Assembly (NCBI RefSeq): GCF_032191835.1
Contig: NC_083232.1
Location: forward strand, 82,274,001 to 82,338,000
Reading direction: 5' to 3'
Length of the DNA stretch: 64,000 nucleotides
DNA from: Heteronotia binoei
Taxonomy: Eukaryota
The notes beneath the pieces were generated by a model. It was not told where the DNA came from and did not search any database. It worked only from the letters and a program-made list of their open reading frames with translations. Below are positions 584 to 50,559 of the stretch, piece after piece. Positions within the stretch are counted from its first letter, which is position 1; each line of letters begins with the position of its first letter. A program made the translations under genes and the position numbers.

Positions 584-638
584 CTGAACCTTTGTTTGCT
601 GTGACGAGGAAATTGGAATTATTATCTAAACAAAAGCG
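584..638 (+). CDS. MED1-like exon (55 bp): EPLFAVTRKLELLSKQK
   Basis: cag|CTGAA...AAGCG|gtaagt; phase 1 to 2; aligns to MED1 LPAMTDRLESIARQN. Confidence 0.8.
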
Positions 639-3600
639 GTAAGTTTATTTTTAATGTGCATGAAATGTAAGAATACAAACTATATGTCCAAAGAGGGCTG
701 TTGTCTGATCCACTTCAGCTTGTACTTTTCTAAGGATGTCAGCTCTGGCTTGGGAAATTCCTGGAGATTTTTTGGGGGGAGGCGCCTGCAGAAGGTGAGA
801 TCTCAGCAGAGTATAAATCCATAGAGTGCACCCTCCAGAGCAGCTATTTTCTCCAAGCAAACTCTGTCATCTGGAGGTTAATTGAAATTTTGGGAGGTCT
901 CCAGGCCGCACCTGGAGGTTGGTAACTTTATTTATAAACCCTTTGCCGCTGTTGCACAGCACAGCCCATTCAAATACCAATACGAATTGACACACCTGCT
1001 GTTTTCAGTCCTCTCTAGTATTTTTTACTTCCTAGAAGAATCTGTTGCAGAACTGGTTCCACCTTCCAAGAGGTCTCTGACAATAACACTGCCCCCCACC
1101 TCAAAGGAAAGGATGCTATTAGCTAATTCCATGCTTGAGAGGAGACAAATAGAGCACAACAGAGTCTCAATTACTCTTAACATTTAAGAAGGATACTTTT
1201 ACACATTAGTCTCCTACTTTGACATATTTATTGCTCCACTGTTTTCCCCCGTAATCAAATCCTAAGTTATTGTGACCTATAAACTTATATTGTTAATTGA
1301 TACTTAGACTTAGACTTTGCATATATCAAAACGTCTTCATTAACTTGTATGCTAATTTGTTGTTCACCTCTGTAGAGGCATCTGCCTCTATACATATGAA
1401 CTGTTAACTTCCATTTCTACGTATCTGAGCAGGTGTGCCTGCACACAAATAAACCTTGAATAAACTTTGTTGGTGTGGTAACAAAAGATTCCCTCATGCT
1501 GCTTCCAACGTTCCTGTGTGCTCAGGACAACTGACAATGGCAGTACTTCTCAAATAATTCCCATACGGAGTTGCCAACAGCCTGTGGTCTAGTGATCTCT
1601 CAGAACTACAGCTGATTTCCAGAAGACAGAGACCAGTTCCGCTGAAGAAAATGGCTCCCTTTCCACCTCCAGATCTCCAGGAATTTCCCAACCTGGAGCT
1701 GGCAACCCTAAATTCCCCAGGCCCATCTTGCAAAAACTTGAAGTAAACAAAATGGTGACTGAAATTGCATTCAGTCAGTTCAAAAGTTTAAATGGAAGCA
1801 AAATATTGTTATTAATATTTTACTTTCCTCATACTATAAAGTTAACTTCTTGTTTTGTTTTACCATATGGTCTGCATATCTAAGGGAAAGAAATAAACAT
1901 ACACAATTTAAGCTCTGTGTGTGTGTAAAATGAATAAATGGAGGCACTCAGTAACTGGAACAGTGTTTAAGCCCAACCATGATAGCTCTGTGTGAGTGAG
2001 GGCTTGTTATTAAAGGGCACTGAGCTCCTTCATCTATGGATGTTTCTGTGAGGGGGAGAGAGAGGACCTGAGGTATGAGATGGTTATGGCTCAGTATTTT
2101 AAGAGATGAGATAGGTGGCAAATGTGACACCTTGACCTACATGTAACCCTTAACCTGACAGAGAAGTTTAAAAGGATGGTAGGCTCTCTGTGAGAATAGA
2201 GACAGGGAATCACATAAAGACAGAGCAAAAGTGTTTGCCTTTATTAGGGGCATATTGGAGACTAAAGGCTTGTCATCACTGGCATGTTATTGGTAGATGT
2301 GTTGCTGTCGTTGTATAATCAGCCATGGACTGGGTGTAGTTTAGTTCAGTATTTAAATTATAGCTCTCTATGATCATATCCTTGAAAAGGACATTGTAAA
2401 CAATATGGGAGTTGAGTTTGCTTTCTGTCTCTTGGGTACAAAGAGCTGACAGGCATGTCCTTTCAAAACCACTGATGCTCCTGCACTCAGTGCAAGGTAC
2501 TGTGGAACAGAACTTCCTTTAAGAGCAAAAATGATTAGAGGTGCTTCTCATTGAAGTGGCATTTCATATGATACAGAAACAAAGCACTTGGGTTCTGAAG
2601 TTTAATATGGGAGTTCTCATGGCCACTGGGAAACCAGAAGTCACTGAGTGTACCAAGATGAAGTGGCAAGCGAATCTGCTTCACATTCTGTTGTTTTTTT
2701 TAATACACTTCTCTTCCCTTGCCTCCTTTCTTTAGACTGAACTGTCATACTAGCCCCAATGGAACTGCTTTCTATATCACAACTGAAATGTTCTACATAG
2801 AGATTCAGTTGAAAGCAGATGGAGAACCGATAGAGATAAAACTGGCTCACCCTGGAGAATCTCCTCAGGTAATGTTTACAGATTTGGGGGTGGGGGTGTT
2901 CTGGTTCAATAAATTCCACAGAGAAATAAAATGAAGAGAGGACTGATTATATGCAGGTTCTCCACAGTGTTCCCTTTAAATTGTGTGTGTGAGCAGCCAC
3001 TCATTAACACAGGAAGCCCCGCTCAACAGCAAAGTGCCCATTTTCAGATTACAGCAGTTTTGTTCTGCTCAGGATGTGAACTGTTCTGCTCAGAAGGGGG
3101 GATGAAATTAGAGGGAACATTGATCCTTCAGCTTGGACTACTATTACTACAGCTGACTAAACAGCTTTATCCAGGGCCTTTTTTGTAAAAAAATCCCAGC
3201 AGGTACTCATTTGCAAATTAGGCCACACACCCTGATATCACTATTGTTTCACACAGGGTTTTTGGTATAAAAAGCCCAGTAGGAACTCATTTGCCACATC
3301 CCTGACACCAAGCCTGCTGAAACTGTTCCTGTGCGTTCCTACTCAAAAAGAAATCTCTGCTTATTAAATGTTGTGGGAATAACCTAGGGTTGCCAGCTCT
3401 GTGTTGGGAAATTCCTGGAGATTTGGGGGGGGGGGAGAGTCTAGGAAGGGTGGGGTTTGGGGAGGGACCTCAGTAGAGCATAATACCATAGTCCACCCTC
3501 CAAACTGGCATTTTACTTCAGGGGAATGATCTCTATTGCCTGGAGATTGGCAACCCTAGAATAATCCCTTCTTTCACTGTTTTGAACATGAACATTGCGC

Positions 3601-6600
3601 CCAAGAACATAAGCTAAGTATGAGCCTAAACTTTAGCAAATGCTGCATTCATACCAGTCTAAGATGTCATTTTCCCATTAGACAAAAGGTAGAGAGAATA
3701 CACTGCAGTTGCTAGCTATACTTTGAAAATCAATTTATTTGTTTTCAAATGTACCTTGTCATTGAAAATTTATTCATGGGCTGCATCTTTGCAGCCCATC
3801 TGGACAGTGTGAGTTCCTCTTTGCTCATTTAGCTGTACCCACAAAGGTTCAGTTCATAATAATTGGGAAAGGGTGGGGCTGGAAGGGCACACCCACACTT
3901 CTTGCAAGAAGGAACTTTCAACTTGCAGTCCTAGAAATACAAACTCCTGGAAATCTACCTGCAGTGAACCAGCTCAGCTACATGGTAACTTAGCCACAGA
4001 GACCACCCAAAGGGTATTTATTTTATATATTAACGTTTATACCCTGCCGTTCCTTGTGGATTAAGGAAACTTATAAACAGTGTTCCCTCTAAGCTGAGTT
4101 AGTGTGAGCTAGCTCACAATTTATAGGATTTTCAAGGCAAGTAATGAATAGGGATGGTTTGTCATTGCCTTCTTCTATATAGCAACCCTGGATTTCCTTG
4201 GTGGTCTCCCATCTATGAATGAACTAGGGCTGACCTTTTTTAATCTTTCAGTCTCCAACAAGCTTGGGGTAGTCTGGGGCCTTTAGGGTTGCTAAGCTAA
4301 CCTGAATTTATGCAGTTTGTCCTTTTTGCTGTGTACCAGTCACTGTTGTGGATTTTATAGAATTACTGTACAACTTCTATCCCCTTGTCTTCTAGAACTG
4401 TGAAGACCTGCTGCAGGTTCTAAGGTATGTGTGTTCCAGCCAGGTGGATTCTTGGCATTTGCAGTTGCATGTGTTTGTCATCAAAGAATTGTTTCTGTGT
4501 CACTTGCCAGGTGATTTTCTGTGGTATTTAGTTAGAATTTAATTTCAAGGGTTGCCCACCCCCACCAAGATTTAACTCTTGTAAATGTCATGATTCAGAG
4601 GTCCATAGTAAGAACATCCTTTTCCAGGATCTATACACAGGGTCATGATGGTAGATTCAAAGGAGACATCTGAACTAAAGAATAAGGCGGAGAATAACCA
4701 CTCCTTCAATATGCCAGCCTAGCGGCAAGTCATATTTGTTTCATTGTTTTTAGATGTCAACAAACCAGCTCTATGGCATTTTAATATTAACTATTGGGCT
4801 TTTTTTTTAAAGAAAGAAAGATTATGATACCTTTGGAAAGATTTTGGAAGAACTTCTCAGTATTTACCAAATTCCAGGAAGCAGGTTAGTTCATTACTTT
4901 ATACGTTCTCTTTCATCTAAGACCTTTCCCCTCCTTATGAAGTCTCTCTTTCTTTGCTAGCAAAACAAAAGCCAAAGTGTTTCTTGCCCTGCAGTCTTTG
5001 GAAAGAGACATCACTTCCCTGTCTCTTTTGCCCAGGTGAGTTGAGCAGGAGAAAATGCTGTCTTACATGTTTGGGTTTTGCAGGTGGAATGCTGTGGAAA
5101 CAGCTATTTGTCGGGACAGAGGATCTTCTTATGACTGGAAATGTGGGTCTTTAAAAAATATTTGTATGAAATAATATTTGAGAGGTTTCAGATAGTGTGC
5201 TACAGTATTTCCCCCCCCCCCCAGCTTTCCACACACTCATTTTCAAAACTATTGAACTTCAAATGGGTTTTAAATTGAGAACTTTCTTAAATGCTAAATG
5301 CCAATTCCATTGCGGTCTATCTCAGCTCAAGGCAAAAATTCTGTTCTGGTGTGTGTTGCATCTTTCCTGGGCCTTGGAGGAGGGGGGGGAGGGCGGTCCT
5401 TGAGCACAGGGTTGCTAACCACCAGGTTGGGGGGTGGGATGGTCTGGAGATTTCTTGGAATTACAACTGAGCTTCAGACTACAGAGAACTGTTCCCCATG
5501 AAGAAGAAGGTTGCTTTGGAGGTAGACTCTATAGCATTATACCCTAATCAATCTGTCCCAACCCTTGCCTTTGAAGTGCATTGATTTCCAAATCATGAGA
5601 AGCAGAAAAAAAGAAATGTCGTCTTCATTTTTTTGGATTCAAGGAATGAAAGGACTGAAACAAATTTTGCTATCGCCAAAGTAATCTTAGAGTCACTGCC
5701 TCTAAGCAAATAAAACAGATTCCAAAGTATAGTGTAGTGCCTGATCCATAGTAAGTGGCATGATGACGAGGAGGAGGAGGAGGAGGATTTGTTAACACAT
5801 TAAAGCAAACATGAAATGTGCTGGTATTATTAAGGTCACAGGGGAAGACTGTGTCAGAGTAAGGACAATTCAAAAATCTTCCTTGTAGAACCATGGAGGG
5901 TAAACTATACTGTTCCACTCCCAACTCTCTAGGAGTTGCCCAAACTGGATTTCCTACTAGGGTTTCCAAATCCTGACCCTACCCCCACCCCTTTTCCCCA
6001 GCCACCACTGCAGGCAGTGGTAGAAAATTAATCTAAAAATATTGATGTTGGGCAATGGTGCAACATCACTTCCTGAGAAAACCCCAAAACCACACCAGTC
6101 CTCTTTAGGAGTCACCAGAAACAGCTATGGTTTTATCGTAGAGTTTTCTGGGATTCCTAGACAGGTGTGACCTCACTTTTGATTTTTTTTCCTGGAAGTG
6201 ACATCACACCATCACTGATGATGCTCCATCTGTGTGCCCACCACCAAGGTCCCCCACAGATTGCCAGGCATTGCTCTGCTAACTTGAAACATGGAACTGA
6301 ATTTCTTACTTTATTCTTAGCTATGGCTGCTTCCGTAGTTGGACAGCTGCATGCTTCTGTCCTCACTTAAAGGGAGCTTCCATGTCACATTAGAGAAGAG
6401 CCTCCTGGGGCTCTCTCCTCTGGAGCAGGATCCAAGGAGGAACTGCAAACAAAATATCCACGTGGATGCCCAGCCTGTGGTCAGTACAGGGAGAGGATGA
6501 AACTAGGCTCTGCATTCTCCCCCCACCCCTTAACCAACCTTTTCTTTTCCCAGCTGAGCTGTGGTATTAACCCTATATCATTGTTCAGCTGGAAAATAAG

Positions 6601-9600
6601 AAAGAAGGGAGTGGGAGGGGGGGGGGGAAAGGAGAGGTTGCTGGCCATGCTGGGGCCTACCATAATGTTGCACTGGGGCTTCTGCATCAAGGACACGACC
6701 TGAAAGAGACAGGGGCATGAAGGACAGCAGCAAGTGACATGGGCTCAGGAAGTGTGGACTCCATTCGTCGTGCCGCTTAGGGTTACCAGGTCCTACCTGG
6801 CAGCTGGCAGGGGGGGGATCCTTTGTACTTTTGGGGATCTCCTCCCTCATGAAACTCTATGGTTTGTAGCCAATTTTATTATAGAGTTCTGCTTGAAAAC
6901 TAGAGTGCCGCTGCACAACATTGATGAGGTGATGATGTTGCCTTTTGGGCCAGTTGGGGGCAGGATTTTTCCCTGCCGGCCTGTGCCCCACAAAAGCAGG
7001 TATTCTCCCACCTCCCGCAGTAGGGGTTTGACAACCCTATTGCTGCTGCTGATTCAGTGGGGCTGCGCTTCTGTGTGGAACTTGAAATGTGTTTTGAGGG
7101 CCCAAAAAACAGCCAAGGAGGTAGGGATGCGAGCTGCTAGGTGGGACTTTGGGATCCCCTGGAATTACAGCTCCTCTCCGGGCTACAGAGGTCAGTTGCC
7201 CTGGAGGAAATGGATGTATGGAAGGTGGACTCTGTGATATTGTACCGCACTAAGGTCCCTGATCTTCCCATGCTCCAACCCCAAAATTTCAAGAGCTTTC
7301 CAGCCTGGCTCTGGCACCCCTACCACCCCCATTCCCTGCCTGTGGGGGGGGGGGGCATGGCAACCCTACATGGAGGGCATTAGTGTTGCTCAAAGCCATG
7401 GTGCTGGGGGTAGCTGACTAACCCTTGTCTTCCTTATGCAGTTTCCCTGATCAAAAATGCCTCCGGGCTGCTTTAAACCTCAGTGGGAAAGAAAACATAT
7501 GCACAATACCAGCCCTGCTGCTCATATTACTTTTAGTGGGTGGGTGTGGGGTCCATTTCCAATTCAAGAAGTGGTAGGGGGGCAATAATTAAACCCTCTT
7601 CCACAGGACCACAGACCAAATTTATATTGGCTGGTTTTTATATCACCAGATCTGATCTTTTAAAGTGCCCGTACTTAAATGTATGGGTTAAAAGGACTGC
7701 ATGCACAGCCTTCTTGATGGATTCTTTTCTGCCTGCTTTTTAGGGGTGGGGGGGGAAGGAGCTGTGAGGTCAGATGGACATGGGAGGGGGGCAAATCAGC
7801 TGAGCAATTCCCCAGTTGCCTCTTGCTTCAGGTGGGCAGAAGTCAAGGGTTGGCCTTACCGAATATTGAGGATGTTCATCCTTCACTACTCACTGTGCAT
7901 TCTTTAAAAACAGAGCACTAGATACAGAGAGAACCACCAAAATACTTCATGGAAAAATAGGATACCTTAGGCCAAGAACTGCAGGTACGTCTTTTTTCCT
8001 TCCGCTTTGGAAAGTGTCATCAAATTGCAGCTGACTTCTGGCGACCTCATTGTGTTTTTGAGGCAAGAGACAAATAGTGGTGGTTTGCCATTGTCCGCCT
8101 CTGCACAGTGATCCCAGACTTCCCATCCAAGTGCTAACCAGCACCAAGCCTGGTTAGCATCTGAGATCGGTCAAGATCAGGATGGCCATCCAGGTCAGGG
8201 CTGAACGTCCACTAAAAGGTAGCCTTGAGCAAATCTTGGTAGCAAGCCAACAAAATTTAACAACCTGAAGGCAAACAGCTGAGGGGGGTTGCAGGAGTAG
8301 GCCATCCCGTGAAAATCCATAGCAGTAGATAAAGGCACTGTTGTCTGTGATTTGCATGTTCTTCCTGCTGTTATCTATGAGCAGGGGTGGCCAAAGTTGC
8401 ATGATGTAAGAGCCACATAGAATAAACGTCAAGATGTTTGAGAGCCACAAGTCATGAACATCAGATGTTGAAGCCACATAGAACAAATGTCAAATGTTTG
8501 CGAGTCACAAGACATGAATGTCAGATGTTTGAGAGCCTCAAGGAAGGAAGGATGGGAGGGAGAGGAAGGCAAATAGATGGTGGAGGGAGAGGTGGAAAGA
8601 AAGCAACTATAACTTAAACTGTATTCTCCACGCTGCCAGCTGGCTTGGCTTGGAGAAGTGATTTAAAGAGACAAATGCCTTCATCCATTTGGTTATGGGG
8701 TGGCTGATGGGGGGAGGGGCTTCAAGAGCCATAAAATATGTGTGAAAGAGCCACATATGGGTCCCAAACCACAGTTTGGCCACCCCTGCCCTATACATCA
8801 TTGGCTGTATGGGATAGTTTCTGCTTATGAGTAGACAATTCATACATATGGTAAGGAATTTCTCTTGGATTCCCCCCTTAATTATTGGTCTGGGAGTTTC
8901 TAAATATTATGGGACTATCTGAATATTTTGATACTCAAAAGTCAACATCAGATTTATTTCCCAGAAGCTATAAAAGCAAATGAGGCAAGAGAAAACATAA
9001 GAGAAGCCATGTTGGATCAGGCCAGTGGCCCATCCAGTCCAACCCTCTCGGTCACACATTGGCCAAAACCCAGGTGACATCAGGAGGTCCATGAACAGGG
9101 CCAGAGCTCCAGAAGCCCTCCCACTGTTGCCTACCCTCAAGTACAAAGAAAACAGAGCATCTCTGCCTCAAACACAGTGTTCATCTTAGCAGGGGCTTCC
9201 AAGCGGAAGAGAGAGGAGGAGGGCAAAATTCCAGGGGTCTTTTCCCATATATCTATTGGTGTCATATTATTCACTACTGCATCATTGTAACCATGATTTA
9301 TCAGTCTGTGGTTTTGGATTTTTTAAATCTTGTAGAAACACCTATGAGTCTCGAATTTTATCTGTCACCCATGCAAATCTTGGAAGAACAGCTCACTCCA
9401 GGTAATTGTAAACGAAATAAAGTAGGTAGAGTCATAGTTGAATTTCTTGCAAGAGAAAGCCAAAGCTGGAGAAAGTTGCGAACCAAGTGAAACATTCAAA
9501 GCTGTGCTGATCTCCTTGGTAATGCCAGTCCTCTTACTGCTTTTGCGGGGCATCCACTTGCTGATGAGCTGCATTCGGACAAAATGGTGAGCCACAAGTT

Positions 9601-18600: not shown

Positions 18601-21600
18601 TTCGTGTCCACAGCTCTTAACCACTACCTGTTCACCAACTGAAGGGGTTTCTTCTGAGAGACACCTTCCACTTATCAGCACGGTGCCTGGTTTCCCTTTG
18701 ACCCTCATGCTTTGTGACAGCGGTGAGGCTGCCGTTCTCAGAGTGGGACACCTTACAAGTCCCTGAGAGTCTTATCCATTTGCCTAACTGTCTCTGTTTC
18801 TCCAGATCAGCCACCTTGGCCTCATGGGTGTGAACTTGTTCCCTGAGAACCAGGAGGTCCTTGCAACGAGCACACACCCATGATTTGTCCGCTAGGCAGA
18901 TAGTCATACATATGCAATACTCGTTATACTCAGTGCAATACACTGGATAGCCCCCGACCTCCTGCTGGCATTCTACCTTCATAACTGCCTTTTTATTATT
19001 TTTGTCTTCCCCTCCCCGCTTTTTTTTTTTAAGTTCTATTTATGTAGATTTGTTTGTGGAAAGTGTGCTTACCCTTTTAGGAATGTGGAGAGACTAGTGC
19101 CCTGCCTTCTTCACCCTGCTGCTCAACTTGCACCCAATTAGTAATGCAGGACTAAGGCTACGTTATCACATATACAAGGGCAGGGTTCTGTGGCTTGCAC
19201 ATTGCACTGTATTGACAAAAAGTTTCGATACAGAGAGAAAACTTAAACAAAACATTATTGAACACAGTTTTGAATCCAACAAAGTTTAGTTCTGGGTATA
19301 AGCTTTCACATGCATGCATACTTCTTCAGGTACATAGGAACAGACTTGCAAAACCTTTACATACAGGTGAGCAGGTTGAGTTACCAGGAAAGGGTAGCTA
19401 GCTAGAGTCGAGATGCATAAGTAACTGGGTGATAAGTATAGCTAAGACAGCTAACATTATTGAGTCCTTCTGTTTTAACTTGCAAGATCATCTAGAGAGC
19501 TTTTGGTAAGTTAACAAAACTTTGCTTGGGTTTTATTTTGAGGGACACCTCTTTTGGTGCGCCTCTCTCTTTTATTTCCTTGTGGAATCTAATCTCTAAT
19601 AAAATAACTTCCTTCCAGTTTCTTCAGAGCTACTTCATTTTGAAGTTTGTCCGGTGAAAGCCAATAGCTTTTCGGTTACATTTCAGCAGCCTGGGGAGGA
19701 AAATCTAGCCTGTGGTATGTGTAAAAAGCAGAAAGGTGGTGGAGGTGACAGCAACTTCTGTACTAAAAACTGTTAATGATAACTGTGGGTTAGGGTGTTC
19801 TTGCTTGGACCCTTAGCAGATTACCAGAACTGTTCCTCCAAAGGCTGTTAAGACTTCTTTTTACCTAGCTTTCCCATTTGTTTTCTTCCCTTCCCTGGTT
19901 GGAACACACAACCCCACTACTTGTTGACTATAGTGTAATGTGATTGCTATCTCTATGATGCCACTTGTTTAATTTCCACATCCATTGGGTTATGTAATTT
20001 CCAAAGTGTAAATTTCCAAGTTTAGTAAAAAAAATCCTAATTGCGTATTCTTCTCTCCCTCCCTCCTGTTCAGTGTTGATTGATGTTCCCAGCTCAAAGG
20101 AAGTCATATGTACTCTTTATACACTTTCTAAAGACAAGGTCTTAAATGGGATTGAGGAATTTTTCAACAGAGTTTTGAAGCGGTAAGTGATGTCACATCC
20201 AGGGCTTTTTTTTGAGTAGGAACACACAGGAATGCAGTTCTGGCTGGCTTGGTGTCATGGGGTGTGGCCTAATAGGCAAATTAGTTCCTTCTGGGCTTTT
20301 TTTTTTTTTTTTTACAAAGAAAGCCCATGTCACATCTAATGGCCAAAGTCTAGCCCCTACAATGCAAATGGACGAGTTCAGAGAATGGCACCAGCCACTG
20401 TTACTCTTTTGGGGCTTTGCGACCTCAGGGTGGAACCCCTCAGGTTTGCCCAAACATCTTAAATATAAAAAATTAAATTAACCCTTGCAAAGACATACTG
20501 ACATCAGTGCTGATATTACAGAAACTCAGCCACTGAACAAAGTCTGAGTCCAGGGGCACCTTTAAGACCAACAAACTTTAATGCCAGGTATAAGCTTTTG
20601 TGTGTATGTATCTGAAGAAGTGAGCATGCACGTGAAAGCTTATGCCCAGAATTAAACTTTGTTGGTCTTAAAGGTACCACTGGACTCAAACTTTATTCTA
20701 CTGCTTCAGACAAATACAGCTACCCACATGAATCCAAGCCACTGAAGGCTGAGTGGTTTTTTGGCTTGAGGAGAGGGTGATAGAGGCAACCAGCAACAGA
20801 TAGCGGTGGGGGGCAGGGCTGGAGCTGGCAGTGGAAGGAAGGTGAAAATTTCCCTTTTTATATGCAAGTTGTCACAGGTACCCTTCTTGTTTCTTATTAA
20901 TACTAGAACACGGATTTCCTATTAAAGAGAATCTTTGTAATACTGAGAATTAAGGACCAAACTTTGTGTTGTCCTAAACGATGTAATACTGTTACTACCC
21001 TTCCATTAGGGAAGACTTTATTTAAGGAGTATGCATTTAGCTAGTCTGAGATTCATTGCAAAGATGTATCTCTCTTTACCGAATAAAATTATATTGCATG
21101 TTGACAAGTGTACTGAGTGAAATCAAAATAGTTGTTGCAGTGCAGGTTCAATCACTGGGGCAGGGCTTTTTTTTTTTTTTGAGCAGGAATGCACAAGAAC
21201 ATCATTCCGGCTGGTTTGGCATCAGTGGGTGTGGCCTAATACCCAAATGAATTCCTGCTGGGCTTTTTCTACAAAAAAAGCCCTGCACTGGGGCAATGCT
21301 TTAAGGCATCCAGTGCCAAAGTTGGCTACAGAATTCCAGGGCCCTTGGGTCTCGGGAGCCCCACTGCAGCTCCCTTCTTCCCCTCAAGCCTTACAGTCAT
21401 GGCTCCCATTTACCCACTTGCTCCAAATGCAGCTACATTAGAGGAAATGGAATATGATTTTCCTCACCATCTTTTTAGCACCATCACAACATGTGGACCT
21501 AAGTTCCAGTGAAGCTGCAGAGGCTTCAGGGGCAGCAGCTCAATGGTAGAGCATCTGCTTGAGATGCAGAAGGTTCCAGGTTCAATCCCCAGCATCTCCA

Positions 21601-24600: not shown

Positions 24601-27600
24601 CACGGTCTCTCTAGTCGTCTGAGCCCTTGCTTCAGCTGGCGTAACTCCAAGGTATACCATGGTGCCAGCCTCTTGCGAGGGCGCAGAGGGCGCCGAGGTG
24701 CAATTTCATCGATAGCCCTGGATAGCTGGCTCTGCCAGACTTCCACCAGGTCATCGAGGGAATTGCCAGTGGGCCAGGAATCCCTCAGGGCTGTTTGGAA
24801 CCGTTCCGGGTCCATCAAGCCCCGGGGGCAAGCCAAAATAGGCTCTCCGCCCATACAGGGTTGGGGCAACGTCTCCATACGGGCCTTAAGGGCTAGGTGA
24901 TCCGACCATGGAACCGCTTCAGCTGCGATATCGTTCACCAAAATCCTGGATGCAAAGATCAGGTCTAATGTGTGCCCGGCCTGATGCGTGGGAGTTGTGA
25001 CAAATTGAGTGAGCCCCAGTGTCACCATGGAAGACACTAGGTCCATCGCCTGAGTGGAGGCCGTGTCATCGGCATGGACATTGAAGTCACCCAGGACCAT
25101 AAGCCCCGGGAACTCCAATGCCCAGCCTGCCACTGCCTCCAATAGTGATGGTAAGGCGCTGGCTGGTGCGCTGGGCGAACGGTACACTAGCCAGATCGCC
25201 AACCCCTCTCCAACATCCCACGTCAGGCCGGCACATTCAATGCCATCGATCCTTGGAGCCAGGAGAGCCCGAAAGGTGTAATCCTCCCGTATGAACAACG
25301 CTACCCCTCCCCCCCGCCCATTGTTCCGCGACTGGTGAAAGACCGAGTAGCCTGGGGGGGTCATCTGGGAGAGAGCTACTGTCTCTCCGTCCCGCACCCA
25401 GGTCTCGGTCATGCAAGCCAGGTCCACATCCTGTTGGAGTAGGAACTCGAGGGTCGAGGTCTTGTTGTTGATGGACCTGGCGTTGCATAACACCAGTGAC
25501 GGAGACAGGCATTTCCTCTTGGTCCCACTACCTACCACCGTTGGGATGGGAAGTAGACTGGAAGGTGGCCGAGCACCATTTTGTCTCTGTCTCCTTCTCT
25601 TGTGTATCTGTCTATTCCGTCATATCTTCCCCTCCCCAGGAGCACTGGAATCCCTTGGGCAGGCATCCGCACTTGTCTGGATAGCTCACAGTATAACCTC
25701 TCGCGATTGATCTCCTAATCTATCCCTACCTGTCGTTTAACTTATCCCTCCCCTACCAACTCCTCCTATTCTTAGCTGCTAACTCACTAATTACATCTTA
25801 ATTTAATTAATTTAATAACCCAACCCAATCTCCCCTTCTGATCAATTAATAAGAAATTATAAATTCAATCGATTCCAGCAGTTAATAAATAAATAAATAC
25901 TCCCTCCCACCATTCCTAGTTACTGTGCTAAAATTTGTAAATATAGATATATATAAATTAATATATAAATATATTATACATAATCAATCATTAATTAATT
26001 GACTAAAATCAAATAAATTAATTAATAACAGTTTTAGTGAAATTCATTAGCGGTTAGCAGTCAGTTGGTTCCTAGTTTATAAGTCCAGATAATCAGTAGA
26101 GGGTGGTAGTATATATTGTCAATGGGGTGCAGATGCTAAAGTCATAGGTTAGTCTTGGGTGCTGATAAAGTGCAAGTGCCAGTGCAGTTGGTGTGTAAAT
26201 ACATTCCTCTTTCCCAGTCCCTTGTGGCTTGACACACTCCTGGGCTCCCCTGAACCCCGCACAGGGCTTCTCTGTCGGGGAGTATCCAGGCCGTTGGGTC
26301 AGCCCCTCTAGATAGCGTCCGTGGATGGAAAAGGTGGTGGGGAGATCAAGCTAGCCTGGGCCATCCAGGCCAGGGCGTTGGGAATAGTTATGCTAATAGA
26401 CAGCACAACCCAGCTCTAAGTGGGACAGAATTTTACGGCTCTTATTTATATCCCACCTTGAATTTCTTTCAATAAAAACATGGGCTGTAGGGGAATAATG
26501 GAAGAGACTTTGGGGACCTTGTTGCCTTTCCCCCTCCCTTTCCTGAAAAATAAGGTGGCCACTGATTGATAGTTGAGTTAGAAACTGGGCACAGGCTGAT
26601 AAATGGAAAAGACTTGTTCATTCTTCTAAGCTCCCTCTCCACCCCCATTTATGGAAAGGCTGGCCATTTAATGGAGTCTCAGTGGGAGGGGCTAAATAGC
26701 AGTTGCCTAATGGGAAAGGTCCACTGCAGAATAGACAGCATAATTTCAGCTCATTTGAGGATGGTGGCAAACAGTGAATTGTTCTTTAAGGAAGCCAGCG
26801 GGCTATCTGTGGGACAGACAAGGATATACTGGTGAATTCCTTGAATATTCATAGGATTGTTTTCACTCTTCCTTCTAAGGTGCATGTCTGTCCCTATTTT
26901 TATGAGAACAGTTTTCAAAAAGGCTTTCAAGCTACAGTCCAATGAAGCTGTGCAAGGCATGGAAGAAACATCTGAACAAAGCCCACAGGAGGCCTCCAAG
27001 ATGGCAGACATGGACGGCAGTGGAGCCATCTTGCAAAACACTGGACTTGATTGGGAATCTTGGAGCCCCGACATCCTAGAAAGTCTCCCTGACCCAGGTT
27101 TCCTAGCTTCACTGAGTGAGGCCATGGATATCACTTTTGCGGAGCCACTGGATGACAGGACAGAAGCAAACTCTTCCTCATCAAGTCTCCCACCGCTGGA
27201 GCCACTGGATGACAGGTCAGAAGCAAACTCTTCCTCATCAAGTCTCCCGCCGCTGGAGCCACTGGATGACAGGACAGAAGCAAACTCTTCCTCATCAAGT
27301 CTCCCGCCGCTGGAGCCACTGGATGACAGGACAGAAGCAAACTCTTCCTCATCAAGTCTCCCGCCGTTGGAGCCAATGGATGACAGGACAGAAGCAAACT
27401 CTTCCTCATCAAGTCTCCCGCCGCTGGAGCCACTGGATGACAGGACAGAAGCAAACTCTTCCGCATCAAGTCTCCCACCGTTGGAGTCACTGGATGACAG
27501 GTCAGAAGCAAACTCTTCCGCATCAAGTCTCCCACCGTTGGAGCCACTGGATGACAGGACAGAAGCAAACTCTTCCGCATCAAGTCTCCCGCCGTTGGAG

Positions 27601-28374
27601 CCACTGGATGACAGGACAGAAGCAAACTCTTCCGCATCAAGTCTCCCGCCGCTGGAGCCACTGGATGACAGGTCAGAAGCAAACTCTTCCGCATCAAGTC
27701 TCCCGCCGCTGGAGCCACTGGATGACAGGTCAGAAGGAAACTCTTCCGCATCAAGTCTCCCGCCGCTGGAGCCACTGGATGACAGGTCAGAAGGAAACTC
27801 TTCCGCATCAAGTCTCCCGCCGCTGGAGCCACTGGATGACAGGTCAGAAGCAAACTCTTCCGCATCAAGTCTCCCGCCGCTGGAGCCACTGGATGACAGG
27901 TCAGAAGCAAACTCTTCCGCATCAAGTCTCCCGCCGCTGGAGCCACTGGATGACAGGTCAGAAGCAAACTCTTCCGCATCAAGTCTCCCGCCCTTGGAGC
28001 CACTGGATGACAGGTCAGAAGCAAACTCTTCCGCATCAAGTCTCCCGCCCTTGGAGCCACTGGATGACAGGTCAGAAGCAAACTCTTCCGCATCAAGTCT
28101 CCCGCCGTTGGAGCCACTGGATGACAGGTCAGAAGCAAACTCTTCCGCATCAAGTCTCCCGCCGTTGGAGCCACTGGATGACAGGTCAGAAGCAAACTCT
28201 TCCGCATCAAGTCTCCCGCCGTTGGAGCCACTGGATGACAGGTCAGAAGCAAACTCTTCCGCATCAAGTCTCCCGCCGTTGGAGCCACTGGATGACAGGT
28301 CAGAAGCAAACTCTTCCTCATCAAGTCTCCCACCGCTGGAGCCACTGGATGACAGGACAGAAGCAAACATTTAA
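584..28374 (+). CDS. MED1-like protein (divergent Mediator subunit 1 paralog), 5'-partial; 14 coding exons, 2741 nt, ~913 aa in window
   Basis: 14 exons with AG acceptors and GT donors (one GC) join in one open frame with matching phases. Translation aligns colinearly with recalled MED1 N-terminal motifs (YITTEMFYIEIQL~YITSDMFYVEVQL; KVFLALQSLE~KMYLALQSLE; KILHGKIGYL~KILHGSVGYL; ACFFLKF; LRHQAAYNTLVSSC~IRHQVAYNTLIGSC; LLHFEVCP~LLQFEVCP; RCMSVPIFMR~RCMSIPVTMR). Confidence 0.9.
2736..2868 (+). CDS. MED1-like exon (133 bp): LNCHTSPNGTAFYITTEMFYIEIQLKADGEPIEIKLAHPGESPQ
   Basis: Polypyrimidine tract + ttag| acceptor, CAG|gtaatg donor; about half of residues identical to recalled MED1 segment. Confidence 0.92.
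4396..4424 (+). CDS. MED1-like exon (29 bp): NCEDLLQVLR
   Basis: ctag|AACTG...CTAAG|gtatgt; aligns to MED1 SCPELVQQLR; phase fits neighbours. Confidence 0.82.
4813..4884 (+). CDS. MED1-like exon (72 bp): KKDYDTFGKILEELLSIYQIPGS
   Basis: taaag| acceptor, GCAG|gttagt donor; aligns to EKNFDEFSKHLKGLVNLYNLPGD. Confidence 0.85.
4961..5035 (+). CDS. MED1-like exon (75 bp): KTKAKVFLALQSLERDITSLSLLPR
   Basis: gctag| acceptor after a 76-bp intron, CCAG|gtgagt donor; LALQSLE motif. Confidence 0.9.
7914..7984 (+). CDS. MED1-like exon (71 bp): ALDTERTTKILHGKIGYLRPRTA
   Basis: acag| acceptor, GCAG|gtacgt donor; KILHG.(V/I)GYL.PR motif. Confidence 0.9.
8382..8788. mobile_element. hAT-like MITE with CAGGGGTGGCCAAA TIRs and internal short tandem repeats
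   Basis: caggggtggccaaa ... tttggccacccctg; TSD not preserved. Confidence 0.75.
9336..9401 (+). CDS. MED1-like exon (66 bp): TPMSLEFYLSPMQILEEQLTP
   Basis: tgtag| acceptor, CCAG|gtaatt donor; aligns to HLMNLKYYVSPSDLL. Confidence 0.85.
9640..10150 (-). mobile_element. Older L2 3' fragment
   Basis: Similar to 3' end of the intact L2 (gcagggccctg...aggcttttgtttga); (ATTC)n tail. Confidence 0.65.
10447..10916. mobile_element. hAT MITE with TAGGGTTGCCA TIRs (shorter relatives ~743-927, 1568-1710, 3385-3558, 5408-5545, 49285-49480)
   Basis: TIR pair; TSD gatgtaac/gatgtaat (7 of 8). Confidence 0.85.
11760..11868 (+). CDS. MED1-like exon (109 bp): LQVPGMKVFVTIGGSDVAYKLPIYPLIGNSLTETD
   Basis: catcag| acceptor, ATAG|gtaaga donor; aligns to GMNASVTIEGTSAVYKLPIAPLI. 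Confidence 0.88.
13064..13255. mobile_element. hAT MITE (CAGGGGTCCCCAAC-type TIR)
   Basis: TIRs cagaggtccccaac / gttggggaccactg; perfect 8-bp TSD ATTTAGAT; related copy ~62861-63105. Confidence 0.9.
13358..13482 (+). CDS. MED1-like exon (125 bp): QPVFLPLTAKLCMKFSACFFLKFHPPFPVSSSNIEKLQKLT; GC donor
   Basis: ttccag| acceptor; ACFFLKF.P.PVS motif; the only frame-preserving donor is ACAG|gcaaac. Confidence 0.85.
14930..15147 (-). mobile_element. 5S rRNA-derived SINE (others ~4125-4290, 8003-8201, 13690-13790, 30700-30815, 44330-44525; two copies split by LINEs)
   Basis: Reverse complement reads gatctcatctgatctcagaagctaagcagggttgg...acttggatgggagacc (5S internal promoter region) plus an aaggcaatg.caa tail like Sauria SINE. 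Confidence 0.85.
15188..15358. mobile_element. Fully palindromic hAT MITE (others ~3172-3290, 10152-10330, 14640-14900, 20200-20330, 21160-21290, 43191-43359, 52777-52950, 63630-63700)
   Basis: Arms gcaggagct..tttgcatattaggccac / gtggcctaatatgcaaa..cctgc; TSD agcttggc/ggcttggc. Confidence 0.85.
15970..16079 (+). CDS. MED1-like exon (110 bp): IAIDGLNLAPLHELIVQHALSEKHKYNPAVNNFFVV
   Basis: tttcag| acceptor, GTG|gtgagt donor; aligns to APLYELITQFELS. Confidence 0.85.
17958..18153 (+). CDS. MED1-like exon (196 bp): CLPDCPKHCYYINNG...LRHQAAYNTLVSSCISGIANSE
   Basis: cttcag| acceptor, GAAG|gtataa donor; HCY and RHQ.AYNTL..SC motifs. Confidence 0.92.
18632..19000 (-). mobile_element. CR1 ORF1 (zinc finger/leucine zipper) fragment
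   Basis: YPVYC.E...WVCARCKDLLVLREQVHTHEAKVADLEK, typical of reptile CR1 ORF1 N-terminus. Confidence 0.7.
19619..19714 (+). CDS. MED1-like exon (96 bp): SSELLHFEVCPVKANSFSVTFQQPGEENLAC
   Basis: ttccag| acceptor (in-frame alternative at 19628), TGTG|gtatgt donor; LL.FEVCP...FSV.FQ.P motif. Confidence 0.9.
20074..20182 (+). CDS. MED1-like exon (109 bp): LIDVPSSKEVICTLYTLSKDKVLNGIEEFFNRVLKR
   Basis: gttcag| acceptor, AGCG|gtaagt donor; aligns to VMDVQDSTHVSCKLY...FIAKVVQR. Confidence 0.88.
20545..20710. mobile_element. Palindromic Penelope-terminus derivative with degenerate hammerhead core at 20612-20641 (others ~19270-19335, 37170-37230, 53000-53215)
   Basis: gagtccag..gcacctttaagaccaacaaa arm in both orientations; ctgaagaagtgagcatgcacgtgaaagctt. 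Confidence 0.7.
21529..21788 (+). mobile_element. Squam3-like tRNA SINE with internal ~52-bp duplication (others ~11300-11500 -, 43005-43410 +, 45020-45245 -, 55600-55700 +)
   Basis: A-box tagctcaatggtagagc-like head, B-box ggttcaatcc present twice, tail ggcagcttcatatgttca. Confidence 0.8.
21795..21992 (+). mobile_element. CR1-type 3' tail fragment (others ~8990-9180 -, 14140-14360 +, 36270-36365 +, 48525-48725 -, 51950-52150 -)
   Basis: ggactggatgggccactggcctgatccaatatggcttctcttatgttctta terminus repeated across copies. Confidence 0.7.
22490..26341 (-). mobile_element. L2-clade LINE, near full length, in the last intron of the MED1-like gene (antisense)
   Basis: 946-aa ORF2; (TACAT)n tail at ~22490-22510; 3' end gggagggcgggatataaat; ~670-bp 5' region; splits a 5S-derived SINE with short GAGAT duplication. 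Confidence 0.93.
22698..25538 (-). CDS. L2 ORF2: APE endonuclease + reverse transcriptase
   Basis: EN motifs CNARS, TETW, GDFN, TLDL, SDH; RT motifs YRPVSNL, QSGFR, DLSAAFD, GVPQG, YADD; L2-type C-terminus LHWLP...AFSVAAPQLWN.LP. Confidence 0.95.
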   Translation of the reverse strand: MVGSGTKRKCLSPSLVLCNARSINNKTSTLEFLLQQDVDLACMTETWVRDGETVALSQMTPPGYSVFHQSRNNGRGGGVALFIREDYTFRALLAPRIDGIECAGLTWDVGEGLAIWLVYRSPSAPASALPSLLEAVAGWALEFPGLMVLGDFNVHADDTASTQAMDLVSSMVTLGLTQFVTTPTHQAGHTLDLIFASRILVNDIAAEAVPWSDHLALKARMETLPQPCMGGEPILACPRGLMDPERFQTALRDSWPTGNSLDDLVEVWQSQLSRAIDEIAPRRPLRPRKRLAPWYTLELRQLKQGLRRLERPWRHTRDEATRTSYRTLMRSYEMAVKAAKKEYFAAKIASAKSCPAQLFRVIGDLITLPQGKPNIRELEIGCEAFAKYFADKISSLRQDLPITLDTVSETEAPRRSSDLVLDHFNPLSLEEVDGILSAARPTSCDLDPFPSWLIKSCQRELRCPLRDIINRSLLEGHFPTPLKEALVRPLLKKPTADPAELANYRPVSNLPFLGKIIERAVALQLQRFLDDASVLDPCQSGFRPGHGTETVLVALVDDLQRQLDRGGAAILMLLDLSAAFDTVDHRLLIHHLADIGVEGLALQWLSSFLMGRGQRVAIGGERSQRHTLDCGVPQGAVLSPMLFNIYMRPLAQIARRFGLGCHQYADDTQLYLLMDGRPASAPGNLDRALQAVATWLRLSGLKLNPAKTEVLHVGRGILGKEISLPAFDGAPLKTAQWVKSLGVLLEPSLSMEAQITATAKSAFFHLRRVRQLAPFLEHQDLAMVIHATVTSRLDYCNTLYMGLPLYRTRELQLVQNAAARLLLGLPRWEHIRPGLRGLHWLPIVYRIQYKVLVITFKALYGQGPTYLRDRLSPYEPQRALRSVGKSRLNIPGPKEVKLQSTRTRAFSVAAPQLWNKLPEEVRALRNVDQFRRACKTALFKQAFTNN
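26880..28374 (+). CDS. MED1-like terminal exon (1495 bp): CMSVPIFMRTVFKKAFKLQ..., acidic linker, 19-aa repeat array, stop
   Basis: ctaag|G TGC ATG acceptor completes Arg codon CG|G; start matches MED1 RCMSIPVTMRAIRRKA; open to TAA 28372-28374; AATAAA at 28595-28600. Confidence 0.88.
27142..28368 (+). repeat. Coding minisatellite, 57-bp unit x ~21.5 (EPLDDR[S/T]EANSS[A/S]SSLPPL)
   Basis: 1227 bp = 21 x 57 + 30; units differ by only a few substitutions. Confidence 0.98.
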
Positions 28375-31902: not shown

Positions 31903-32323
31903 CTAGATGTGTTCAGGTGGGCTTGGAGGCAAGCCTAATTGTTCCATTAAACGGACAGTTCTTTCTTTCAGCCAAGAAAGGCCTGGCTTCCCAGAAGTTG
32001 TGTGTCCTTTCGATCTTCTACAACATTCACTTTGGAAAGAAGCAGTCCCACTATTTGTGCAATAGTGTCCACAAAACGGGGTACCATTTTCACCAGTTTG
32101 TTGATCTTGAGCTCTATTAGGCTGCTCCTCTGGAGAATGTGGATGACCAAGGTCCATGTCCTCAACTGTATCCAGTAAGTCCGTAAGACAGGGTTGTGAG
32201 TGCGTACAGTTAAGATCCTTAATTGTATCCTCTTCATATTTGTTTATTTCATTCAGCAAATCAGTAACTCTCTTCAGCATTGCAGAATCACGTTGGTTGT
32301 TGTGACACCAAGACAAAAGAGCA
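31903..32323 (-). CDS. YAE1: YAE1 coding exon 3: ALLSWCHNNQ...DLLDTVEDMDL...EQLGLPPSPPEHI*
   Basis: Poly-T + ag acceptor; SALLSWCH, DLLD..EDMDL and ECCR motifs as in recalled human YAE1; total CDS 660 nt = 219 aa. Confidence 0.93.
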
Positions 32324-33072
32324 CTAAAAAAAAAAAAGCAGACATTTGAGACCAAGTGAAAAGTTAGATACCTACTGCATCATGGACTCTCCTGGAAATG
32401 GGTATCCTTCTAGCAGATACCTGATGTCTCAGTGCAGGTGCTTGCCCTGCACGGCTTTTCTTCTGTGAATTTGACAATCCCAGGAAGCCTTTGCAGGGGT
32501 TAGAAGGGCCCCCCTCCTCTTTTCACCAGCAGAAAAGCTGACTGCATCCAGTGATTTTAAACAGTTCAGGAGGGAAGTGGGCTTGCATTTATGGTGGATC
32601 CCACTTTTCCCAGCTCCAGAAAAGATACAGGCTTTTCCAGGGTGACCGCCTTAGGAGATGTAACCCAGAGGGGGAGAAGCAGACAGGAGTTTTAAACAGG
32701 GCTGCAGCCTGAAACATCTACTTTAAGTTCAATGAGGCATAGGAATGGTTGGGGGAGAGGCAGCTATAATCAGCACAGAGACAGAAATACTCTTGATTTA
32801 AATAACCGCGAAATACTGATTTTTCAGAGCCTACATTCAACGGAACATACATCCTGCCTTCAAGGTACTTTAAATGTATGGGAAAGCATTTTCAAAAGTT
32901 ATTGCTAACTGGACCCCAAGTATATATCTGAAATAGATGTTGGGAAAGACAAGCTTGTGAGTCTCCAGAGGCATCGGATCACTGCTGGAGTAGCTTGTGG
33001 AGGCTTGTCCTAAACCTAAAAACCCTTTTTGATGAGATCTGTCAATTTTAAAAAAAATACTTTAGAACTTAC

Positions 33073-33194
33073 CTTACATTACCTTTGAGCTGACCACAAG
33101 TGAACATGATCTTTGCTGCTTCTTCATACCCCTGATTAAAACCCTGCTGAAGTGTCAGTTCTTTCCCAGCCTCAACTCCTTCCCGATAGCCTTC
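33073..33194 (-). CDS. YAE1: YAE1 coding exon 2 (122 bp): EGYREGVEAGKELTLQQGFNQGYEEAAKIMFTCGQLKGNV
   Basis: Yae1 G-x3 deca-repeat domain (EGYRDG...QQGFNQGY); ttttag| acceptor, AAG|gtaagt donor. Confidence 0.95.
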
Positions 33195-33758: not shown

Positions 33759-33875
33759 TTTAACCCGTTTCTCCATGGTGCTTTTCCATTCTTTCTGTGC
33801 TATGCCCATCTCATCTGCATCCTCATCAAACACATCATCATTGGCCTGGCTCACTGCTGACCGTACCCAGGACAT
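33759..33875 (-). CDS. YAE1: YAE1 coding exon 1: MSWVRSAVSQANDDVFDEDADEMGIAQKEWKSTMEKRVK
   Basis: Matches recalled human YAE1 N-terminus MSWV...DVFDEEADE...AQREWQSNMQRRVK; donor AAA|gtataa; upstream acceptors at 33956 and 34033 imply a non-coding first exon. Confidence 0.93.
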
Positions 33876-50510: not shown

Positions 50511-50559
50511 CCAGTGTTTATTCTGAATTCTAAAATTCCAACCTACTCAATGAAATTTT

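What the first reader, a model, noticed from the sequence alone, without database searches (positions are those of the whole stretch)
584..28374. A second, strongly diverged MED1: intact intron-containing paralog of Mediator subunit 1 next to YAE1
Seen: 14 exons splice into one uninterrupted frame covering the MED1 N-terminal domain. Several exon sizes (55, 133, 29, 72, 75, 96 bp) and all phases match the human MED1 structure as I recall it, so this is an old genomic duplicate, not a retrocopy. Its best exon is only about 50% identical to recalled MED1, whereas true vertebrate orthologs are highly conserved there, and the neighbour is YAE1 rather than CDK12/FBXL20. Established: the ordered MED1 N-terminal ~500 aa docks on the Mediator middle module (MED4/MED9, near MED24); humans have paralog pairs for MED12, MED13 and CDK8 but not MED1. 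Inference: non-mammalian vertebrates may assemble an alternative Mediator with a swapped MED1 slot. An automated 'MED1-like' label may exist, but I know of no functional description.
Basis: partly seen in the sequence, partly recalled or inferred. Interest (0 to 1): 0.85.

Follow-up and report, generated by a model that had tools for sequence, protein, structure and literature searches.

The report
Ancient short MED1 paralog in a gecko
This gecko gene is an intact, selected copy of an old second MED1 (a Mediator coactivator subunit) that jawed vertebrates other than mammals keep next to YAE1; it has the Mediator-docking domain but lacks the hormone-receptor motifs and long tail, it is already auto-annotated, and nobody has studied it.

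Summary
Window 584-28374 (+) holds 14 exons with standard splice sites. They encode residues 79-991 of the NCBI model "mediator of RNA polymerase II transcription subunit 1-like" of Heteronotia binoei. Three more coding exons lie upstream of the window.

A 51-protein tree puts the gene in a starred clade of short Med1 proteins, found from chimaera and ray-finned fish to amphibians, turtles, birds and lizards. No mammal is in it. This clade is sister to canonical MED1.

- **Gene structure:** both genes have 17 coding exons with identical phases.
- **Neighbours:** the short form sits beside YAE1 (RALA and a CDK13-like kinase in a teleost). Canonical MED1 sits beside a CDK12-like kinase. This points to an ancient block duplication.
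- **Protein:** the ordered Mediator-docking domain is kept (human MED1 E 5e-112, TM about 0.7-0.8). Both LXXLL boxes and the long tail are lost. The tail is short and acidic, and here a 57-bp repeat has expanded it 21.5-fold.
- **Selection:** dN/dS is 0.23-0.32 in turtles and birds and 0.54 between geckos.

No RNA reads hit its exons in three subsampled runs. Function in Mediator is inferred, not shown. A 2008 paper had already predicted two Med1 forms in frogs and fish.

The parts
584..638 (+). MED1-like coding exon 4 of 17 (first one inside the window), 55 bp
   Evidence: Exact spliced match to P0151 residues 79 onward, AG acceptor and GT donor. Same size as chicken MED1 exon 4.
2736..2868 (+). 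coding exon 5, 133 bp
   Evidence: Pfam Med1 hit on the enclosing ORF, E 1.8e-4, which is below Pfam's cutoff. Same size as the chicken MED1 exon.
4396..4424 (+). coding exon 6, 29 bp
4813..4884 (+). coding exon 7, 72 bp
4961..5035 (+). coding exon 8, 75 bp
7914..7984 (+). coding exon 9, 71 bp (74 in chicken MED1)
9336..9401 (+). coding exon 10, 66 bp (90 in chicken MED1)
11760..11868 (+). coding exon 11, 109 bp (112 in chicken MED1)
13358..13482 (+). coding exon 12, 125 bp, followed by the only GC donor
15970..16079 (+). coding exon 13, 110 bp (119 in chicken MED1)
17958..18153 (+). coding exon 14, 196 bp, end of the Pfam Med1 profile
   Evidence: Pfam Med1 E 2.8e-9, 37.1 bits, above the cutoff of 25..
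19619..19714 (+). coding exon 15, 96 bp. With exon 16 it encodes the beta strands that match human MED1 ~437-481, the reported MED24 contact.
   Evidence: PMC7921410.
20074..20182 (+). coding exon 16, 109 bp
26880..28374 (+). Last coding exon, 1495 bp with the stop. It holds the end of the folded domain (CMSVPIFMRT...) followed by an acidic Ser/Pro-rich tail.
27141..28368 (+). Coding minisatellite, 57 bp x 21.5 copies (19-aa unit, about -3 net charge per unit), 97% matches. It makes most of the 497-aa tail.
   Evidence: Tandem Repeats Finder. Paroedura picta has one copy of the unit. NCBI isoforms X1 and X2 differ by 19 aa.
31903..33875 (-). YAE1 coding range (219 aa, Pfam Yae1_N), the convergent neighbour that marks the locus
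   Evidence: with locus L001 coordinates minus 15446. The same arrangement is seen in Paroedura, two turtles, a duck and Callorhinchus.

Best explanation
**Shown.** This is the Heteronotia binoei ortholog of an ancient paralog of Mediator subunit 1, the 'small Med1' or MED1-like gene. It arose before jawed vertebrates diverged, as part of a duplicated block:
- CDK12 with MED1 on one copy.
- CDK13-like, RALA, MED1-like and YAE1 on the other.

The paralog is retained from chimaeras to birds and lizards and was not found in mammals. The protein keeps the whole ordered N-terminal MED1 fold. It has lost both LXXLL nuclear-receptor boxes and the ~1000-aa Ser/Lys-rich disordered tail. In their place is a short acidic Ser-rich tail, which a 57-bp minisatellite has expanded in this gecko. 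The gene evolves roughly ten times faster than MED1 but remains under purifying selection.

**Inferred.** The protein occupies the MED1 position at the lower end of the Mediator Middle module, probably in a restricted set of cells. The resulting Mediator keeps the Middle-Tail (MED24) brace. It could not be recruited by nuclear receptors through MED1 LXXLL boxes, and it would lack the MED1 disordered region.
For: - **Identity:** exact match to XP_060104147.1, 'subunit 1-like'.
- **Fold and domain:** Pfam Med1. Human MED1 chain 7emf_A, E 4.6e-112, residues 21-515 against 11-521. AlphaFold2 model with pLDDT 80 matches MED1 in five Mediator structures at TM 0.64-0.82.
- **Paralogy and age:** in the careful IQ-TREE run the short-form clade scores 96/94* and the canonical clade 100/99*, with invertebrate outgroups. 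Each clade follows the species tree.
- **Gene structure:** 17 coding exons and identical phases in both genes.
- **Synteny:** YAE1 follows the short form in 2 geckos, 2 turtles, a duck and Callorhinchus. In Seriola it lies next to RALA (best PDB matches are Ral-A) and a 1419-aa kinase. The first exon of that kinase shares the MPN... and LVEYDD[IV]SS motifs with the 1478-1483-aa kinase beside canonical MED1 in chicken and turtle.
- **Lost parts:** canonical MED1, amphioxus and a hemichordate all have two LXXLL boxes 100-180 aa after the domain. None of the 26 short forms whose domain end could be located has one there. Short-form tails are 29-497 aa long and acidic in tetrapods.
- **Selection:** NG86 dN/dS on 488 codons is 0.54 (bootstrap CI 0.40-0.75) between the geckos and 0.23-0.32 elsewhere. 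Neutral substitution at the observed divergence would give 7-10 stop codons, with a chance of none of 0.003 or less.
- **Docking regions:** the N-terminal motif (L32, K35, W41) and the strands equivalent to human 437-481 are conserved. A structural paper reports these regions as the MED4-MED9 wrap and the MED24 contact (PMC7921410).
Against: - **No expression evidence.** Three H. binoei RNA-seq runs (2 samples, 1 study, about 6% of each read, roughly 30 million reads) gave zero depth on exons 13-16 and no intron-spanning joints. An RNA search over those exons and the introns between them listed no holder.
- **Weak constraint in geckos.** dN/dS of 0.54 is high for a core transcription factor subunit.
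- **Conservation is uninformative on the interface.** It is spread evenly over the domain and not concentrated on the reported contact segments.
- **Canonical MED1 of H. binoei was not retrieved directly**.
Confidence: 0.62

Rival explanations
1. The short protein works as an antagonist rather than as an alternative subunit. It competes with MED1 for the Mediator slot, or soaks up partners of the MED1 N-domain such as PRDM16-type factors. This would damp nuclear-receptor and MED1-IDR-dependent transcription.
For: It keeps the docking domain but lacks the LXXLL boxes and the long disordered tail. The MED1 N-terminal region 1-530 binds PRDM16 directly (PMC4318147). Its fast evolution would fit a regulatory add-on rather than a core part.
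Against: There are no expression or binding data. The acidic tail with a recurring Glu/Asp-x-SSS-hydrophobic motif, kept from frogs to lizards, suggests the tail has a positive function of its own. This rival differs from the best explanation only in its outcome, not in its binding mode.
Confidence: 0.2
2. In this gecko lineage the gene is losing its function. Constraint is relaxed, the gene is transcriptionally silent, and the tail is being overrun by a minisatellite. On this view the gene is intact only because decay has not yet hit the frame.
For: The gecko-gecko dN/dS of 0.54 is about twice that of turtles and birds. No reads fell on exons in three RNA runs. The 57-bp repeat is open in all six frames, so its openness carries no information.
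Against: The bootstrap CI for dN/dS (0.40-0.75) excludes 1. All 17 exons, their splice sites and their sizes are kept in both geckos. Neutral drift at the observed divergence predicts 7-10 stops, with a chance of none of 0.003 or less. The RNA test had low power: the tissue is unknown and only about 6% of the reads were used.
Confidence: 0.1
3. It is simply the fast-evolving true MED1 ortholog of this genome, or else a retrocopy.
For: I could not list a separate H. binoei canonical MED1.
Against: The gene nests with short forms of species that also have a canonical MED1: Bubo, Patagioenas, Tympanuchus, Pleurodeles, Nanorana and Callorhinchus. It lacks the CDK12 neighbour and has YAE1 instead. 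Other squamates, Crotalus and Ophiophagus, have a canonical MED1 that is 89-90% identical to the bird protein. It has 17 coding exons, so it is not a retrocopy.
Confidence: 0.02

Closest known systems
Canonical MED1 (TRAP220/DRIP205/PBP), Mediator Middle-module subunit
   Same: The ordered N-terminal domain matches end to end: human residues 11-521, 37-40% identity, TM 0.64-0.82. Both are in the Pfam Med1 family, with 17 coding exons and identical intron phases.
   Different: It has no LXXLL nuclear-receptor boxes and no ~1000-aa Ser/Lys-rich tail, but a short acidic tail instead. It sits at a different locus, beside YAE1 rather than CDK12. Its protein evolves about ten times faster: bird-turtle identity is about 70% against about 94-97% for MED1.
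'Small form' Med1 predicted in frogs and fish (Bourbon 2008, PMC2475620), and NCBI 'subunit 1-like' models
   Same: Same gene family. The window gene is the gecko member, and its NCBI models are XP_060104147.1 and XP_060104148.1.
   Different: That paper only lists the existence of two forms in frogs, fish and worms. It does not list chicken among the species with two Med1 forms and gives no origin, domain losses or selection analysis. A 2026 survey of fish Mediator paralogs does not mention a med1 paralog (PMC13069492).
Vertebrate Mediator paralog pairs MED12/MED12L, MED13/MED13L and CDK8/CDK19
   Same: These are duplicated Mediator subunits thought to be mutually exclusive in the complex. 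This rests on established knowledge and on PMC2475620 and PMC13069492.
   Different: Those pairs are in the kinase module, are kept in mammals, and keep the same architecture. This pair is in the Middle module, was not found in mammals, and one copy has lost its activator-binding parts.
Engineered MED1 truncations (1-530 and similar) used in mammalian studies
   Same: They have the same extent as the natural short form: the folded domain without LXXLL boxes or tail. MED1 1-530 still binds PRDM16 (PMC4318147). From my own recollection, not checked here, such truncations still enter Mediator and rescue some MED1 functions (Ge et al. 2008, Mol Cell Biol).
   Different: Those are laboratory constructs of the canonical gene. 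This is a separate, naturally selected gene with its own acidic tail.

Membership tests
Med1 protein family (Pfam PF10744) | Significant match to the Med1 profile | tested here: met
   Exon 14 alone scores 37.1 bits against a cutoff of 25. PF10744 is recorded for the full protein.
Med1 protein family (Pfam PF10744) | Full-length similarity and the same fold as the ordered domain of MED1 solved within Mediator | tested here: met
   7emf_A E 4.6e-112 over residues 21-515 against 11-521. Foldseek E 4e-40, TM 0.71/0.78.
Med1 protein family (Pfam PF10744) | Physical incorporation into Mediator (contacts with MED4-MED9 and MED24) | not testable with these tools
   No partner sequences were available for a complex prediction. 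The only support is conserved motifs in the reported contact segments.
Canonical MED1 orthologs (TRAP220) | Groups inside the canonical vertebrate MED1 clade | tested here: not met
   It falls in the sister clade (96/94*). The canonical clade (100/99*) excludes it.
Canonical MED1 orthologs (TRAP220) | Two LXXLL nuclear-receptor boxes downstream of the folded domain | tested here: not met
   The only LxxLL is at residue 162, inside the fold. Canonical MED1, amphioxus and Ptychodera all have two boxes after the domain.
Canonical MED1 orthologs (TRAP220) | Long Ser/Lys-rich, net basic C-terminal disordered region | tested here: not met
   The tail has a net charge of -75 and 21% Asp+Glu. Canonical tails are about 1000-1260 aa with net charge +3 to +23.
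Canonical MED1 orthologs (TRAP220) | Head-to-head neighbour is the CDK12-type kinase | tested here: not met
   No gene is called within 10 kb upstream, and YAE1 lies downstream. Chicken and turtle MED1 have the kinase neighbour.
Short-form MED1-like orthologs of jawed vertebrates | Monophyly with short Med1 proteins of other vertebrates, following the species tree | tested here: met
   Its nearest relative is Paroedura (73% identity), followed by Hemicordylus, then turtles and birds.
Short-form MED1-like orthologs of jawed vertebrates | Conserved position beside YAE1 (RALA/CDK13 block) | tested here: met
.
Processed retrocopy | Intronless copy of the parent mRNA | tested here: not met
   There are 17 coding exons, with introns at the parental positions.
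Pseudogene | Frame disruptions or dN/dS near 1 | tested here: not met
   There are no stops or frameshifts. dN/dS is 0.54 (CI 0.40-0.75) between geckos and 0.23-0.32 elsewhere. The neutral expectation is 7-10 stops.
Pseudogene | Lack of transcription | tested here: inconclusive
   Depth on exons 13-16 was zero in three subsampled RNA runs of unknown tissue. NCBI models exist, but their RNA support is unknown to me.

The most novel reading that the evidence does not exclude
MED1-like is the resident MED1-slot subunit of a cell-type-restricted Mediator, for example in germline or early embryo, in all non-mammalian jawed vertebrates. Its acidic tail, with the repeat-prone Glu/Asp-x-SSS-hydrophobic motif, would be a built-in activation or partitioning module of opposite charge to the basic MED1 disordered region. 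It would give that Mediator a different set of recruiters. Mammals would have lost this second Mediator state.
Probability: 0.15. Interest if true: 0.75.

Novelty: new variant of a known kind. Interest (0 to 1): 0.52.

Why it matters
MED1 is the main docking point for nuclear receptors on Mediator, and its disordered tail is the standard marker of transcriptional condensates. Almost all of that knowledge comes from mammals, which have one MED1.

Birds, reptiles, amphibians, fish and chimaeras have kept a second gene for roughly 450 million years (date from general knowledge, not tested here). This gene encodes only the docking domain plus an acidic tail. Mediator in these animals may therefore exist in a receptor-blind form with no mammalian counterpart. 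That possibility is directly testable in chicken, Xenopus and zebrafish.

The gene is also a natural experiment on what the folded MED1 domain does without LXXLL boxes and the tail. If the protein turns out not to enter Mediator, the finding is only a fast-evolving leftover of an ancient duplication.

Tried and rejected
- **RNA evidence.** An RNA-run search with exons 14-16 plus their introns listed nothing. A second search failed three times because the server was busy. It then listed three raw-read RNA runs of the species. Laying those reads on 15900-20300 gave zero depth on the four exons and no intron joints. Only 95-99% matches to intronic dispersed repeats appeared. I treat this as low-power: the tissue is unknown and about 6% of each run was read.
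- **Canonical MED1 of H. binoei.** Two word-indexed searches, with owl and rattlesnake MED1, listed many canonical MED1 proteins but no gecko one. Notes of this scan held nothing under CDK12, YAE1 or mediator.
- **Locus fetches.** Isoform proteins P0171 and P0189 were not on record. Exact splice mapping of turtle MED1 P0299 on L008 failed, so I computed no canonical dN/dS.
- **Interface conservation.** The reported contact segments are no more conserved than the rest of the domain. They are about average, so this says nothing either way.
- **RALA in the window.** No Ras-type coding exon was found at 28.4-64 kb.
- **Unnamed short-form database fragments as possible mammalian copies.** All five (P0003, P0006, P0009, P0010, P0015) fall inside the sauropsid or frog short-form groups. 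Four sit beside a bird, turtle, lizard or frog, and the very long P0003 branch is unresolved.
- **Rejected readings.** Retrocopy, true ortholog and dead pseudogene are rejected. The reasons are given under the rival explanations.


Full report
**What is in the window.** The window has no gaps. On the + strand, stop-to-stop frames with clear MED1-like translations are spread from 0.6 to 28.4 kb. Two of them hit Pfam Med1 on their own. Exon 14 scores 37.1 bits (E 2.8e-9) and exon 5 scores E 1.8e-4.

An exhaustive HMMER search with exon 14 returned a 972-aa protein, 98% identical to the query stretch, which also contains flanking intron translation. Cluster look-up names it XP_060104148.1, 'mediator of RNA polymerase II transcription subunit 1-like isoform X2' of Heteronotia binoei. 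A 991-aa isoform X1 (P0151) is also listed.

An exact spliced mapping shows that 14 window exons encode residues 79-991 plus the stop of P0151 without a single difference. All acceptors are AG, and the donors are GT except for one GC. The public locus is GCA_032191835.1, CM063334.1, at 82.26-82.31 Mb. It shows three further coding exons upstream of the window, making 17 in all.

**It is a paralog, not the ortholog and not a retrocopy.** I built a maximum-likelihood tree of 51 N-domains. They were 29 short forms, 16 canonical MED1 and 6 invertebrate outgroups (amphioxus, two hemichordates and three arthropods).
- The short forms make one clade (96/94, starred) and canonical MED1 makes another (100/99, starred).
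- The two clades are sisters within vertebrates.
- Each clade follows the species tree from chimaera through ray-finned fish and coelacanth to amphibians and sauropsids.
- Several species appear in both clades, among them Callorhinchus, Pleurodeles, Nanorana and Bubo.

Chicken canonical MED1 has 17 coding exons of 28, 107, 79, 55, 133, 29, 72, 75, 74, 90, 112, 125, 119, 202, 96, 106 and 3247 bp. The gecko gene has 52, 104, 79, 55, 133, 29, 72, 75, 71, 66, 109, 125, 110, 196, 96, 109 and 1492 bp. From the second exon on, every difference is a multiple of three, so all intron phases are shared. This is the mark of an old genomic duplication.

**The locus points to a block duplication.** YAE1 (Pfam Yae1_N, about 220 aa) follows the short form, tail to tail, in H. 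binoei, Paroedura picta, Emydura, Caretta, Oxyura and the chimaera Callorhinchus.

In the compact genome of Seriola the short form has two upstream neighbours.
- The first is a 206-aa GTPase whose best solved relatives are Ral-A, ahead of Ral-B.
- The second is a 1419-aa protein kinase.

Canonical MED1 of chicken and turtle lies head to head with a 1478-1483-aa kinase. The first exons of the three kinases share the MPN start and an LVEYDD[IV]SS motif. I therefore read them as the CDK12/CDK13 pair, but that naming rests on my recollection of the human proteins.

From established knowledge of the human map, YAE1, RALA and CDK13 lie at 7p14 and MED1 and CDK12 at 17q12. These regions are parts of the classical HOXA/HOXB paralogous regions. 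That fits an origin in the early vertebrate genome duplications. This last step is inference.

**What the protein keeps and what it has lost.** Residues 21-515 align with human MED1 11-521 in the Mediator structures (E 4.6e-112). An AlphaFold2 model (pLDDT 80, pTM 0.75) matches MED1 chains of five human and mouse Mediator structures at TM 0.64-0.82. It matches yeast Med1 more weakly.

According to Zhao et al. 2021 (PMC7921410):
- the MED1 N-terminus wraps MED4-MED9;
- strands at about residues 437-481 touch MED24;
- the LXXLL boxes lie outside the fold.

The corresponding gecko segments are conserved, with near-invariant L32, K35, W41, F433, E434, V435, F447, P450 and L455. They are not more conserved than the rest of the domain, however.

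Canonical MED1 of all vertebrates sampled, amphioxus and a hemichordate carry two LXXLL boxes 100-180 residues after the domain. They also carry a tail of 1000-1600 residues with zero to positive net charge. No short form has an LXXLL there. Their tails are 29-240 residues long and, in tetrapods, clearly acidic.

Aligned tails show a recurring acidic-x-SSS-hydrophobic element from frogs to lizards, and it is tandemly repeated in frogs. In H. binoei one such unit, single-copy in Paroedura, has been amplified by a 57-bp minisatellite. The array has 21.5 copies with 97% matches at 27141-28368. It gives a 497-aa tail of net charge -75. The repeat is open in all six frames, so only the upstream splice phase defines its reading.

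**Is it functional?** On 488 ungapped codons of six sauropsids, NG86 dN/dS was as follows:
- 0.23 between the two turtles;
- 0.30 between the two birds;
- 0.26-0.32 across orders;
- 0.54 between the two geckos, with a bootstrap 95% interval of 0.40-0.75.

Random substitution at the observed gecko divergence yields 7-10 stop codons, and frames without any stop appear in at most 0.3% of trials. Exon number, sizes and splice sites are the same in both geckos. The gene is therefore maintained by selection, more weakly in geckos.

Its protein changes about ten times faster than MED1. Summed tree paths from bird to turtle are about 0.6 for the short form against 0.05 for MED1. Canonical N-domains are 89-97% identical among amniotes.

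Expression is the weak point. Three RNA-seq runs of the species came from two samples of one study. About 6% of each was read, roughly 30 million reads in all. None of them put a single read on exons 13-16 or showed an intron joint. Reads fell only on intronic dispersed repeats. Tissue is unknown to me, so this shows low or absent expression there, not silence.

**Most likely mechanism.** The docking domain is retained, selected and predicted to fold like MED1. The recruiting parts are gone. The simplest reading is an alternative occupant of the MED1 position. It would keep the only Middle-Tail brace, the MED1-MED24 contact (PMC7921410). The resulting Mediator would be blind to LXXLL-dependent nuclear-receptor recruitment and would lack the MED1 disordered region.

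The MED1 N-terminal region also binds factors such as PRDM16 (PMC4318147). A short form could therefore still be targeted by some activators. Whether it acts as a positive alternative subunit or as a competitor cannot be decided here. Both readings depend on binding that I could not test.

**Comparison with what is known, and novelty.** The gene is already in public annotation as 'subunit 1-like' in many birds, turtles, lizards, amphibians and fish. Bourbon 2008 stated that frogs and fish are predicted to have large and small Med1 forms (PMC2475620).

I found no paper that describes its origin, its losses, its expression or its function. A 2026 survey of fish Mediator paralogs does not mention it.

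Four points appear to be undescribed:
- the gnathostome-wide distribution, with no mammalian member found;
- the CDK12/MED1 against CDK13/RALA/MED1-like/YAE1 block structure;
- the clean loss of both nuclear-receptor boxes;
- the acidic, repeat-prone tail.

I rate it a new variant of a known kind, of moderate interest. The absence from mammals rests on searches that return representatives only, and on general knowledge of the human gene set.

**Earlier notes of this scan.** One note on the same window (s1-340725) described the minisatellite tail. My checks agree with it.

Noticed in passing
window 22698-25538 (-): An uninterrupted 946-aa LINE ORF with endonuclease (Exo_endo_phos) and reverse transcriptase (RVT_1, E 2.8e-38) domains sits in the last intron of the MED1-like gene. 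It may be a young, possibly still active, element.
   Followed up: partly
window 46356-47321 (-): A 321-aa ORF with a weak reverse-transcriptase C-terminal match (RVT_1, E 1.2e-5, below Pfam's cutoff). It looks like a truncated non-LTR retrotransposon copy.
   Followed up: no
window 50500-51500: A GC-rich stretch (GC 0.53 over 50001-52000), open in several frames on both strands, that looks like a CpG island. By synteny it could be the promoter of the next gene (RALA in other vertebrates), but no Ras-type coding exon was found in the window.
   Followed up: partly
window 18399-18839, 19134-19427 and 20207-20300: Intronic stretches collect RNA-seq reads that are only 95-99% alike and continue into unrelated sequence. 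They are copies of transcribed dispersed repeats, not transcription of this locus.
   Followed up: partly
Tails of frog MED1-like proteins P0205, P0206, P0020 and P0038, against window 27141-28368: Frog short forms also carry tandem acidic Ser-rich units (for example EE-x-SSSIVEE in Ascaphus). A similar tail element has thus been amplified independently in frogs and in this gecko.
   Followed up: partly
window 13483: The intron after exon 12 uses a GC donor (CAG|gcaaac), the only non-GT donor in the gene.
   Followed up: no
L009 1-7300 (Seriola lalandi): The teleost short form lies within 10 kb of RALA and a CDK13-like kinase. This links the MED1-like locus to the CDK13 region and mirrors the MED1-CDK12 pair.
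   Followed up: yes
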